Positions 38,946 through 41,900 of a stretch of DNA of 64,000 nucleotides are shown piece by piece. The notes under the pieces were generated by a model, which was given only the letters and a program-made list of their open reading frames with translations, did no database searches and was not told the DNA's origin. The translations under genes and the position numbers were made by a program. The stretch's first letter is position 1. Every line of letters starts with the position of its first letter. The DNA is from Salpingoeca rosetta (Eukaryota; Protista; Choanoflagellata): positions 522,347 through 586,346 of the forward strand of contig JAWQFM010000034.1 in the NCBI GenBank assembly GCA_033442325.1, read 5' to 3'.

Positions 38946-41900
38946 ATGAGTTCGGATGAAGGTTCTCCAAAGCCGGCGTCATCCACGACGCTGCACGCCA
39001 TCAAGGAGTTTGTCGCAGGATCGGTACGTATCTGTGCCTACGTGCGTGTGTGTATGTCTTTGTGTGTGTATACGTGCGTGCGTGTGTGTATGTCTGTGTG
39101 TGTGTATGTGTGCGTGTGTATGTCTGTGTGTGTACATGTGTGTATGTGCACATGTGTGTGTGTCTGCCTGTGTGTGTGTGTGTGTATGTGTGATCTGTAT
39201 GTCTGCATCTTCTCTCCTCCTTTGCCATCCCCATCCTCCCTCACCAACAAACACAAACACACACACACACACACACACACACACACACACACACACACAC
39301 ACACACACACACACACACACACACACACACACACACACACACACACACACACACACACACACCTAAATACAAATCATCAGATTTGCCCTCAGATTGTGCA
39401 GCAGTCCTTTTGACGTAACATAATGCTTACACAAGAAACTAGACGAAATTGGCTCGCCCGTGATGTGAAGTGTGCAAGATTGTGGTGTGTGAGCGTTTTG
39501 GTGCACGGGTGCTTCTTTGCTGTGTCAAACTTTCTTCTTCCCCCCCCCCCTCACTCTACATGGCTAGCGCGTTTGAACAGAGATGGTGAACGGCCTCTCC
39601 AAAAATATTCATCCATATAGTCCTCGCTGGTCAACTTGGTCCCAGTAAAAAACGCTCACTGTGCAAACGCTCTTCCAAGTCTGACTCGGGAAGCCGCGCC
39701 CTTCTAGATGAACTGGAGGCTGGTTGCAACCTAGGGCTAGCACGGTAGTTGTGAGTCTGAATACAGCGGTAGGCCTAATTCGAGGGAAGGTGGCTCAGGT
39801 AGAGCCTAGCGGTGCGTCATACGACCTACTGCATTAGCCACAAAGTCTCGATACAATTGTGGGTACTCTATACAGTGTGCCTGTCCCAATAGCAAGCGCG
39901 TTCCCTAACGGCCCCAAGTCCTGGTCAGGGACCGAACCGTAATAATCTATGGAACAGGCCAGAAAGGGACTTAATAGCAGGGATCTTCCGAACCCCCAGA
40001 AGATCCATGCCTAATTCAAAATGTTAGATTACAGGCGGCTAATAGTTATAGATCAGAGAGGCGGAATGCATTCTCCTGGGAATCACCGTGTTACGCGGGC
40101 GTGTTATGTGTCCAGAGGCGTGCGTGTGTGTGTGTGTGTGTGTGTGTGTGTGTGTGTGTGTGTGTGTGTGTGTGTGTCGTGTGTGTGTGTGTGTGTGTGT
40201 GTGTGTGTGTGTGTGTGTGTGTGTGTGTGTGTGTGTGTGTGTGTGTGTGTGTGCACCACGGACCCTTCTTCTCCTTCATGACCACTCACCATCACCATCA
40301 CCATCACCCTCACCCATCCCTCTCTTGGCACTGCCACCACCACCACCACCGCCACACCACCATCTTGCAGGGGCTGCCGCACTATGCGCTGTGCGGTTTC
40401 TCTGCCGGTATTGTCGTCTCTTTCGTCCTCTCTCCAATCGAACTCATCAAATGCCGCCTCCAGGTGCGCGCCTGTGTGTGTGTGTGTGTGTGTGTGTGTG
40501 TGTGTGTGTGTGTCTGTGTGTGTGTGTGTCTGTGTACGTGTCTGTGACGTCTGTGTGTGTCTGTGTCTGTGTCTGTGTCTGTGTCTTTGTCTGTGTGTGT
40601 GTCTGTGTCTGTGTCTGTGTCTGTGTCTGCGTCTGTGTGTGTCTGTGTGTCTGCGTGTTTTGGTTTTTGTGCTATGTACTTTCAACCTCACCCAAACCAT
40701 CCACAACTTCCCCTCTGCCCACCCTTCTTCACAACCACACAACAGGTCCAGAACCTGAACGGGTCCGAGGGGCGATACAAAGGTCCAATCGACTGCCTCG
40801 TGAAGGTGCGCAGCTCTAGCAAGCAGCAGCCGCAGGATTGTGTGTGTGTGTGTGTGTGTGTCTGTTGTCACCGTTTGCTTGTTCGACACCATGCTCGTGA
40901 CACTCTCCATCGCAGCTGACTGACTGGTTGAATGGTTGTGTTCTTTCCCGCGGTTTCGCGCTTGCCGCGTTTCTTGCTGTCTCATTGCTGTTCACGTATG
41001 CTGCTGTGTTGCTGCTGCTGTGTGACCTCGATGTGAACCATCAGGTGATGAAAGAGGAAGGTATCGTGCGCGGACTGTACAGGGGGAACCTCGCCACCAT
41101 CCTCCGCGAAGCACCAGGAAACATGGCGTGGTTCTCAACCTACCACATCATGAGCAACGTGAGGCGCAGCTAATGCACGTTCGTGTGTGTGTGTGTGTGT
41201 GTGTGTTTGTATGTGTGTGTGTGTGTGTTTGTGTGTCTGTGTTTATGTGTGTGTGTGTGTGCGTGTCTGTGTGTGTGTGTGCATTGTGACTTGCTGTTGT
41301 CTGTCTCCCACTTTCGCATACTTGATACACCCACGCACGCACTCACACGCATGCGCACGCACGTGCCTCACCTCTACCACCGCCCCTGCCCATGCCGCTG
41401 CCAGAAAATGGTGCCCGAAGGAAAGACGCGTGATGATCTCTCCTGGTATCACAACGCGGTATGATACACACACACACACATACACGCACGCACGCACACA
41501 CGCCCGTGTGGATGAGCACAATCGTTCTTCTTCGTGTGCATGTGCCTCACATACACACACACGCACGCACACACACACACACACGCACACGCACACGCAC
41601 ACACACGCACACACACACACACGCACACGCACACACACACACACACGCACACACACACAATCCTCAATTCAAGTGCGTGTCTTCTCAGCCTCACTCGCTT
41701 TCCTCCCTCCGCTCCCCTTTTTATCGCCACCACCAACTGGCTGTCGTTGGTCACAGCTGGCGGGCGGCTTCAGCGGCATGGCATACTGGACGGCGTTCTA
41801 CCCTGCAGACACCGTACGTGCATCCCTCTACTCGATGCTGTCGCTGTGTGTTGCAAAAGCGATGGTGATGGGCAGTACGCACGTGACTTGGCGTGTACTT

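What the first reader, a model, noticed from the sequence alone, without database searches (positions are those of the whole stretch)
39381..40119. Foreign-looking ~740 bp segment replaces the exons of repeat 1 of an otherwise intact mitochondrial carrier
Seen: exon 1 stops at ...EFVAGS (mid helix 1) and the next recognisable exon begins at helix 3 ([13 protein letters not shown]...). Roughly 85 aa (rest of H1 with PxDxxK, the matrix helix and H2) are missing, while all downstream exons are stop-free. Between a normal acceptor (after a CA run, catcag at 39380) and a normal donor (gtgcgt at 40120, before a TG run) lies sequence unlike the rest of the window: near-uniform base use, about 38 TA dinucleotides in 570 nt, six CTAG, no microsatellite and no credible ORF. 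Established: SLC25 carriers need three repeats. Inference: a recent insertion or replacement (mobile or viral non-coding element, intronic RNA gene), trans-splicing of the missing exons from elsewhere, or an assembly or artificial substitution. I found no TIRs or TSD by eye.
Basis: partly seen in the sequence, partly recalled or inferred. Interest (0 to 1): 0.8.

Follow-up and report, generated by a model that had tools for sequence, protein, structure and literature searches.

The report
Random filler in the reference assembly
The odd 740-base segment is most likely not choanoflagellate DNA but meaningless filler in the public Salpingoeca rosetta assembly, sitting where the first third of a mitochondrial carrier gene should be, so the gene's shortened annotation is an artefact.

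Summary

- **Source.** The window is Salpingoeca rosetta GCA_000188695.1, scaffold GL832990.1. The public record is letter-for-letter identical over 9.6 kb, including the segment.
- **Gene.** It is PTSG_10388. Its NCBI protein (217 aa, two Mito_carr repeats) joins exon 1 (...EFVAGS) directly to GLPHYALC. A sister-species transcript (304 aa, three repeats) has 83 more residues at that point.
- **Statistics.** Within the segment, 39553-40119 (567 nt) cannot be told from independent, equal-probability random letters. This holds for words of 1 to 4 bases, run lengths and lag correlations. It is the most atypical stretch of the 64 kb.
- **No biological signal.** There is no ORF over 65 aa, Pfam or Rfam hit, fold signal, repeat, TIR or trace of the carrier. 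It matches nothing in plasmids, E. coli or phages.
- **No read support.** No public run was listed as holding the segment. Fourteen runs of the same organism hold the flanks, and no contig of four of them lies on 39363-40121.
- **Setting.** It lies between a (CA)61 and a (TG)65 run, where assemblies break.

Best reading (0.8): unsupported assembly filler over an unassembled stretch that holds the repeat-1 exons. The scan's first readers noted three similar 450-580 bp segments elsewhere in this genome; I did not check them. Biological interest is low; it is useful to curators.

The parts
38946..39023 (+). Exon 1 of PTSG_10388 ([26 protein letters not shown]). It ends in mid helix 1, phase 0, with donor GTACGT.
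   Evidence: the exact spliced mapping of NCBI protein P0003 onto the window.
39024..39380 (+). Probable complete intron 1. A (UG)-rich 5' arm pairs with the (CA)61 3' arm, and the intron ends CATCAG.
   Evidence: MFE -168 kcal/mol, z -6.55. The hexamer CATCAG also precedes the exon at 41045. That this is a whole intron is inference.
39381..39552 (+). Natural-looking but unsupported part of the island. It begins where exon 2 should begin and ends with a run of twelve C plus TCACTCTAC. It holds only a faint trace of helix 1 ([13 protein letters not shown]) and has stops in all frames.
   Evidence: Searches show the non-uniform composition. One search gives the match E=67. One search shows the frameshift-tolerant alignment is no better than shuffles. 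laid no contig on it. One search gives the word-share arithmetic.
39553..40119 (.). 567 nt that cannot be told from independent, equal-probability random letters. I take them for filler standing in for an unassembled stretch that holds the repeat-1 exons. In GL832990.1 this is 561899-562465.
   Evidence: Searches give the statistics. Searches find no ORF or domain. Searches find no RNA family or tRNA. Searches give fold z-scores of -0.73 and -0.20. One search finds no repeats. Searches find no match in plasmids, E. coli or phages. One search listed no run. laid no contig. One search shows it is identical in the public record.
40120..40370 (+). Intron-like flank: GTGCGT donor, then a (TG)65 run, a C/A-rich tract and acceptor TTGCAG.
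40371..42549 (+). The remaining seven exons (repeats 2 and 3 of the carrier): 40371-40463, 40746-40805, 41045-41158, 41405-41458, 41757-41813, 42071-42172 and 42454-42549.
   Evidence: One search gives the exact mapping. One search finds two Mito_carr stretches, E=3e-51.

Best explanation
The segment is an artefact of the public 2011 S. rosetta assembly (454 Newbler plus Sanger reads, merged with ARACHNE HybridAssemble and then edited by hand). It is not DNA of the organism.

The stretch between the (CA)61 run and the (TG)65 run could not be assembled. The record carries 567 letters with the statistics of a random-number generator, preceded by about 170-190 poorly supported letters. The missing stretch should hold the two or three phase-0 exons that encode the 83 residues of carrier repeat 1. 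Because those exons are absent from the record, the annotation pipeline joined exon 1 in frame to the helix-3 exon, giving a 217-aa 'two-repeat carrier' (PTSG_10388).

Shown here:
- the randomness of the segment;
- the lack of read support;
- identity of the window with the public record;
- the truncated gene model;
- the complete orthologue in a sister species.

Inferred: how the filler arose. My guess rests on my recollection that the Broad assembler code stores two bits per base and turns N into random bases. On that guess, a sized gap of an intermediate 454 scaffold was turned into random letters during the merge. A rival route is a hopeless read tail after polymerase slippage in the repeat.
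For: -: window 35946-45549 is identical (0 mismatches) to GCA_000188695.1 GL832990.1:558292-567895, segment included.
- NCBI protein PTSG_10388 (217 aa) maps exactly and skips from EFVAGS to GLPHY.
- it has 2 Mito_carr repeats, against 3 in the 304-aa sister-species transcript, which is 73% identical and has 83 extra residues at exactly this junction.
- 39553-40119 fits a uniform independent-letter model. Mononucleotide p is 0.59 and dinucleotide p is 0.43. For words of 3 and 4 bases, 59% and 32% of simulated random sequences deviate at least as much. Run lengths are geometric, and lags 1-12 all lie within about 2 SD of 0.25. Windows starting outside the 39301-39601 neighbourhood of the segment reach a chi-square no lower than 47.
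- no run was listed for the segment.
- 14 runs of the same organism, from several studies, hold 0.47-0.64 of the words of the 2.8 kb around it.
- 0.649 of the distinct words lie in unique sequence outside the island, which matches the ceiling of 0.63-0.64.
- in 4 such runs no contig lies on 39363-40121 at 90% likeness or better.
- the island is bounded by long microsatellites. The window's one N gap (763-862) is also followed directly by a (GT)n run.
- the genome paper describes the hybrid assembly and the manual gap closing.
- three other first-reader notes report 450-580 bp random-looking segments at the sites of conserved exons in the same genome. I did not check them.
Against: - A public assembly should show an unsequenced stretch as N, as it does at 763-862. 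I could not document a step that writes random letters.
- The first 170-190 nt of the island are not random-like, yet they also seem unsupported. A pure gap-filler model does not predict that.
- The read evidence comes from Logan contigs, not raw reads. The tool warns that its filter can drop contigs, so 'none laid' is not proof of absence.
- The original Sanger traces and 454 reads were not examined.
Confidence: 0.8

Rival explanations
1. The substitution was made after the public record, in the data handed to this scan, for example as a planted control or a masking step that writes random letters. On this reading the real GenBank record carries normal exons or N at this place.
For: The 567 nt fit a computer random generator perfectly. 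Several such segments were noted in one genome. No read support was found.
Against: The locus fetched from the NCBI assembly is identical to the window. Independently, the NCBI/UniRef protein PTSG_10388 already lacks the 83 residues. So the exons were already invisible to the annotators in 2011. N runs are kept as N elsewhere in the window.
Confidence: 0.08
2. It is chimeric or contaminant DNA from a bacterium, vector or other organism in the 2010 culture or libraries, joined in through the microsatellites.
For: It is absent from later runs of the organism. Its composition is unlike the host's.
Against: No ORF over 65 aa lies within 739 nt in any of the six frames, which is unlike bacterial DNA. 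There is no match to plasmids or vectors, E. coli or phages even at blastn sensitivity, and no Rfam family. Natural DNA rarely shows fully uniform word use at lengths 1 to 4.
Confidence: 0.05
3. It is a real, recent insertion or replacement in the S. rosetta genome (a non-coding mobile, viral or RNA-gene element) that destroyed repeat 1. That would leave a two-repeat carrier gene, or a gene completed by trans-splicing.
For: The annotated model is in frame and all downstream exons are intact. The segment lies between good splice-site-like signals.
Against: - There is no TIR, TSD or repeat, no ORF or domain, no RNA family and no fold signal, and no second copy in the window.
- It is absent from 14 runs of the same organism that hold the flanks. 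By my recollection all laboratory S. rosetta derive from one isolate.
- No repeat-1 exons were found elsewhere in the 64 kb.
- By established knowledge of the family, SLC25 carriers need three repeats, and the sister species keeps all three.
Confidence: 0.04

Closest known systems
Unsupported or filler sequence in draft assemblies (gap regions and read-tail consensus at microsatellite breaks)
   Same: It is bounded by long dinucleotide repeats where contigs end. It has no support in independent reads. A gene model loses conserved exons at that place, and similar segments are reported elsewhere in the same assembly.
   Different: Gaps are normally written as N. Here the letters look like the output of a uniform random generator, which I have not seen documented for this assembly. 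The mechanism is inferred, not shown.
Mitochondrial carrier family (SLC25, Pfam PF00153 Mito_carr)
   Same: Exon 1 starts helix 1. Repeats 2 and 3 are intact and 73% identical to a sister-species carrier, with PxELxKxRxQ and PADTVKTxxQ motifs.
   Different: The product as encoded by the record has only two repeats. The 83 residues of repeat 1 are absent from the window.
Non-autonomous transposon or other insertion in an intron
   Same: It is a discrete block a few hundred bases long, with composition unlike the host's.
   Different: It has no terminal repeats, no target-site duplication, no other copies and no coding or structural signal, and it is not present in other runs of the organism.

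Membership tests
Mitochondrial carrier (SLC25 / PF00153) | Three tandem repeats of about 100 residues, each with two helices and a Px[DE]xx[KR]x[RK] signature | tested here: not met
   the annotated product P0003 has 2 Mito_carr stretches and the sister-species P0002 has 3; no repeat-1 coding signal in the segment or elsewhere in the window. I take the failure to be a property of the assembly, not of the organism.
Mitochondrial carrier (SLC25 / PF00153) | Significant match of the remaining sequence to the family profile | tested here: met
   E=3.2e-51 at 171.5 bits, against a cut-off of 22.3.
Mobile element insertion | Terminal inverted or direct repeats and a target-site duplication | tested here: not met
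   no direct or inverted repeat of 12 nt or more in 39363-40125.
Mobile element insertion | Further copies, or coding capacity for a transposase, reverse transcriptase or integrase | tested here: not met
   no similar sequence in the rest of the window; the longest ORF within the segment is 65 aa and has no Pfam hit; no match in plasmids, E. coli or phages. The rest of the genome was not searchable.
Intronic structured RNA gene (snoRNA, ribozyme, group I or II intron) | Match to an RNA family, or folding energy better than shuffled sequence | tested here: not met
   the only Rfam hits lie on the microsatellites outside the segment; no tRNA; z-scores of -0.73 and -0.20.
Assembly artefact (unsupported filler) | Absent from independent sequencing of the same organism while the flanks are present | tested here: met
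   0 runs listed for the segment; 14 runs hold the flanks; 0 contigs laid in 4 runs. Caveat: these are contigs, not raw reads, and the tool's filter can miss contigs.
Assembly artefact (unsupported filler) | Statistics of meaningless letters | tested here: met
   consistent with uniform independent letters for words of 1 to 4 bases, run lengths and lags 1-12. It is unique in the window.
Assembly artefact (unsupported filler) | Traceable to low-quality or absent reads in the original assembly data (quality values, AGP, traces) | not testable with these tools

The most novel reading that the evidence does not exclude
The segment is genuine S. rosetta DNA: a very recent insertion of unknown, non-coding foreign sequence, carried only by the sequenced culture, that replaced the repeat-1 exons. 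The cell would then run on a two-repeat carrier, or complete it by another route.
Probability: 0.03. Interest if true: 0.5.

Novelty: not a real feature. Interest (0 to 1): 0.12.

Why it matters
Biologically it matters little: there is no new element here.

In practice it matters more. S. rosetta is the main experimental choanoflagellate, and this 2011 assembly is its reference.
- One gene model, PTSG_10388, is annotated as a 217-aa carrier with two repeats because of this defect. Comparative studies would score it as a truncated or lost SLC25 member.
- If the three similar notes elsewhere in the genome hold up, the assembly holds a class of random-letter blocks a few hundred bases long that silently delete exons. 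A simple dinucleotide-uniformity scan would find them.

Tried and rejected
- **Garbled or inverted repeat-1 exons.** tblastn of both sister-species proteins on both strands of the whole window found nothing for residues 27-113. A frameshift-tolerant protein-to-DNA alignment scored 29-33, against a shuffle mean of 30-31. Rejected for the 567 nt. A faint FA......PFD trace at 39382 remains unproven.
- **RNA gene.** Rfam in E-value mode, a tRNA scan and folding of both strands gave nothing.
- **Transposon.** No repeats or TIRs.
- **Vector, E. coli or phage contaminant.** No blastn match.
- **One garbage 454 read.** The 567 nt would need 855-857 flows in TACG order. From memory, a Titanium run gives about 800, so the idea is weakened.
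- **Finding the true S. rosetta exons.** A word search with the sister species' repeat 1 found only one unrelated JGI protein at 37% identity. Exact look-ups of two long window ORFs were not on record.
- **Documenting N-to-random conversion.** Literature searches on HybridAssemble and fastb gave nothing usable.
- **Read laying attempts.** The single counted call covered 39363-40121 only.

Full report
**What is there**

The window carries an eight-exon gene on the + strand. Exon 1 (38946-39023) reads [26 protein letters not shown]. The next recognisable exon (40371-40463) reads [31 protein letters not shown].

A word search with a downstream exon returned three proteins:
- the NCBI protein 'hypothetical protein PTSG_10388 [Salpingoeca rosetta]', 217 aa;
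- two transcriptome-derived choanoflagellate proteins of 304 and 298 aa.

The 217-aa protein maps exactly onto the eight exons. Every exon length is a multiple of three, so all introns are phase 0. Pfam sees two Mito_carr repeats in it and three in the 304-aa relative.

In the alignment, the relative is 73% identical overall. It has 83 extra residues exactly between ...GS and GLPHY. These are the rest of helix 1 with PFDTMKVLLQ, the matrix loop with GLYKG, and helix 2.

**Where the window comes from**

The contig that encodes PTSG_10388 is GL832990.1 of assembly GCA_000188695.1. The 9,604 bases fetched are identical to window 35946-45549, with no mismatch and the odd segment included.

Window coordinates plus 522,346 give record coordinates, so the segment is GL832990.1:561727-562465. 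The segment is thus in the public reference as held by the tool. The public gene model already jumps over it.

**The segment itself**

It has two parts.

- **39381-39552 (natural-looking part).** This looks like host DNA. It is T- and GT-rich, ends in a run of twelve C, deviates from uniform dinucleotides (p=0.002) and has a lag-2 identity of 0.36.
- **39553-40119 (567 nt, random-like part).** This cannot be told from independent, equal-probability letters:
  - base counts are A150, C140, G148, T129 (p=0.59);
  - dinucleotide chi-square is 15.4 on 15 df (p=0.43);
  - for words of 3 and 4 bases, 59% and 32% of simulated random sequences deviate at least as much;
  - run lengths are geometric;
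  - identities at lags 1-12 all lie within about 2 SD of 0.25.

For 567-nt windows starting outside the 39301-39601 neighbourhood of the segment, the chi-square goes no lower than 47, and the median over all windows is 168. Against a third-order model of the window, the best 'uniform' stretch is 39555-40095 at 112.6 bits. The runner-up scores 24.4 bits.

The segment shows nothing biological:
- no ORF within the segment over 65 aa in any frame, and no Pfam match;
- no Rfam family or tRNA;
- folding energies equal to shuffles, z -0.73 and -0.20;
- no direct or inverted repeats;
- no similar sequence in the rest of the window;
- no blastn match in plasmids, E. coli genomes or phages;
- no residual carrier coding signal on either strand, even with frameshifts allowed.

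**Independent sequencing**

A search of public runs with 39540-40125 listed no holder. The same search with 38700-41500 listed 14 runs of one organism, from several studies (2013-2025), holding 0.47-0.64 of the sampled words. The top five runs, from three studies, all reach 0.63-0.64.

Counting 31-letter words in that stretch gives these shares of the distinct words:
- unique sequence outside the island: 0.649;
- the random part: 0.229;
- the natural-looking part: 0.070;
- pure dinucleotide repeat: 0.052.

The observed ceiling therefore equals 'everything except the island and the repeats'.

Laying the contigs of four of these runs on 39363-40121 at 90% likeness or better placed nothing in any of them. 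The caveats are that these are contigs rather than raw reads, that the tool says its filter can drop contigs, and that each read tool could be used only once or twice.

**Setting**

The island lies between a (CA)61 run (39240-39362) and a (TG)65 run (40122-40254).

The stretch 39024-39380 folds into one long (UG)n/(CA)n hairpin (MFE -168 kcal/mol, z -6.55). It ends in CATCAG, the same hexamer that precedes the exon at 41045. So 39380 is plausibly the true end of intron 1. The GTGCGT at 40120 resembles this gene's GTGCGC donors.

The island thus fills exactly the space where exon 2 through the last repeat-1 exon should lie. Given this gene's exon and intron sizes, 249 coding bases plus one or two introns would need roughly 500-750 bases (inference).

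Contigs of this assembly visibly break at microsatellites. The window's only N gap (763-862) is followed directly by a (GT)n run.

**Explanation**

The most likely reading (0.8) is an assembly artefact. The stretch between the two microsatellites was never properly assembled, and the record holds meaningless letters in its place. The repeat-1 exons are therefore missing from the reference, and the annotators' pipeline produced an in-frame exon 1 to helix-3 join.

How the letters arose is inference. Their perfect fit to a uniform generator suggests a computational origin. One candidate is a sized gap of an intermediate scaffold turned into random bases by two-bit sequence storage. That is my recollection of the Broad code, and I could not document it.

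A degraded read tail after slippage in (CA)61 and the C12 run would better explain why the first 170-190 letters look natural yet seem unsupported. The two routes could both have contributed.

A single 454 read is unlikely. The 567 nt would need 855-857 flows, against about 800 per Titanium run by my recollection.

**Rivals**

- **A substitution made only in the scan's data (0.08).** The identical public locus and the 2011 gene model that already lacks the residues both argue against it.
- **Contaminant or chimeric DNA (0.05).** This fits the missing read support, but not the lack of any ORF or database match, nor the fully uniform word use.
- **A genuine insertion (0.04).** Every test made for a mobile element, an RNA gene or foreign DNA was negative, and no read support was found.

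**Other notes of the scan**

Three first-reader notes on other pieces of the same genome describe random-looking segments of about 450, 535 and 580 bp at the sites of conserved exons (USP32 EF-hand, TMTC, and one unnamed). I could not check them. If they hold, this is a recurring defect of the assembly.

**Unresolved**

It is not settled whether 39381-39552 is real host sequence, and in particular whether the [13 protein letters not shown] trace just after the CATCAG is a mangled exon 2. The match has E=67 window-wide. Its position is suggestive, but that does not prove it.

**Verdict**

Biological interest is low, but the defect is worth reporting to curators of the S. rosetta reference.

Noticed in passing
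window 39024-39380: Intron 1 of PTSG_10388 has a (UG)-rich 5' half and a (CA)61 3' half. They fold into one long hairpin (MFE -168 kcal/mol, z -6.55) that brings donor and acceptor together. From memory, this resembles the GT/AC-repeat introns described in teleosts. The next intron checked (40464-40746) does not fold this way (z +2.4).
   Followed up: partly
window 763-862: This run of 100 N is the only gap in the window, and it is followed directly by a (GT)n run. So contigs of this assembly end at microsatellites. The sequence just before the gap is T-rich, not random-like.
   Followed up: partly
window 38946-42549: All eight annotated exons of PTSG_10388 have lengths that are multiples of three (78, 93, 60, 114, 54, 57, 102, 96), so every intron is phase 0. 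That is why skipping the missing exons leaves the frame intact.
   Followed up: yes
same genome, other pieces (notes s1-436184, s1-436438, s1-436587): First readers reported three more random-looking segments of about 450-580 bp at the sites of conserved exons (USP32 EF-hand, TMTC, and one unnamed). They may belong to the same artefact class.
   Followed up: no
window 39381-39420: Directly after the CATCAG, the frame starting at 39382 reads [15 protein letters not shown] and PFD have the same spacing as in the sister species' helix 1 (FACKIVEYPFDTMK). The reading is off by one base from the phase-0 frame and is followed by a stop. It may be a mangled exon 2 or chance.
   Followed up: partly
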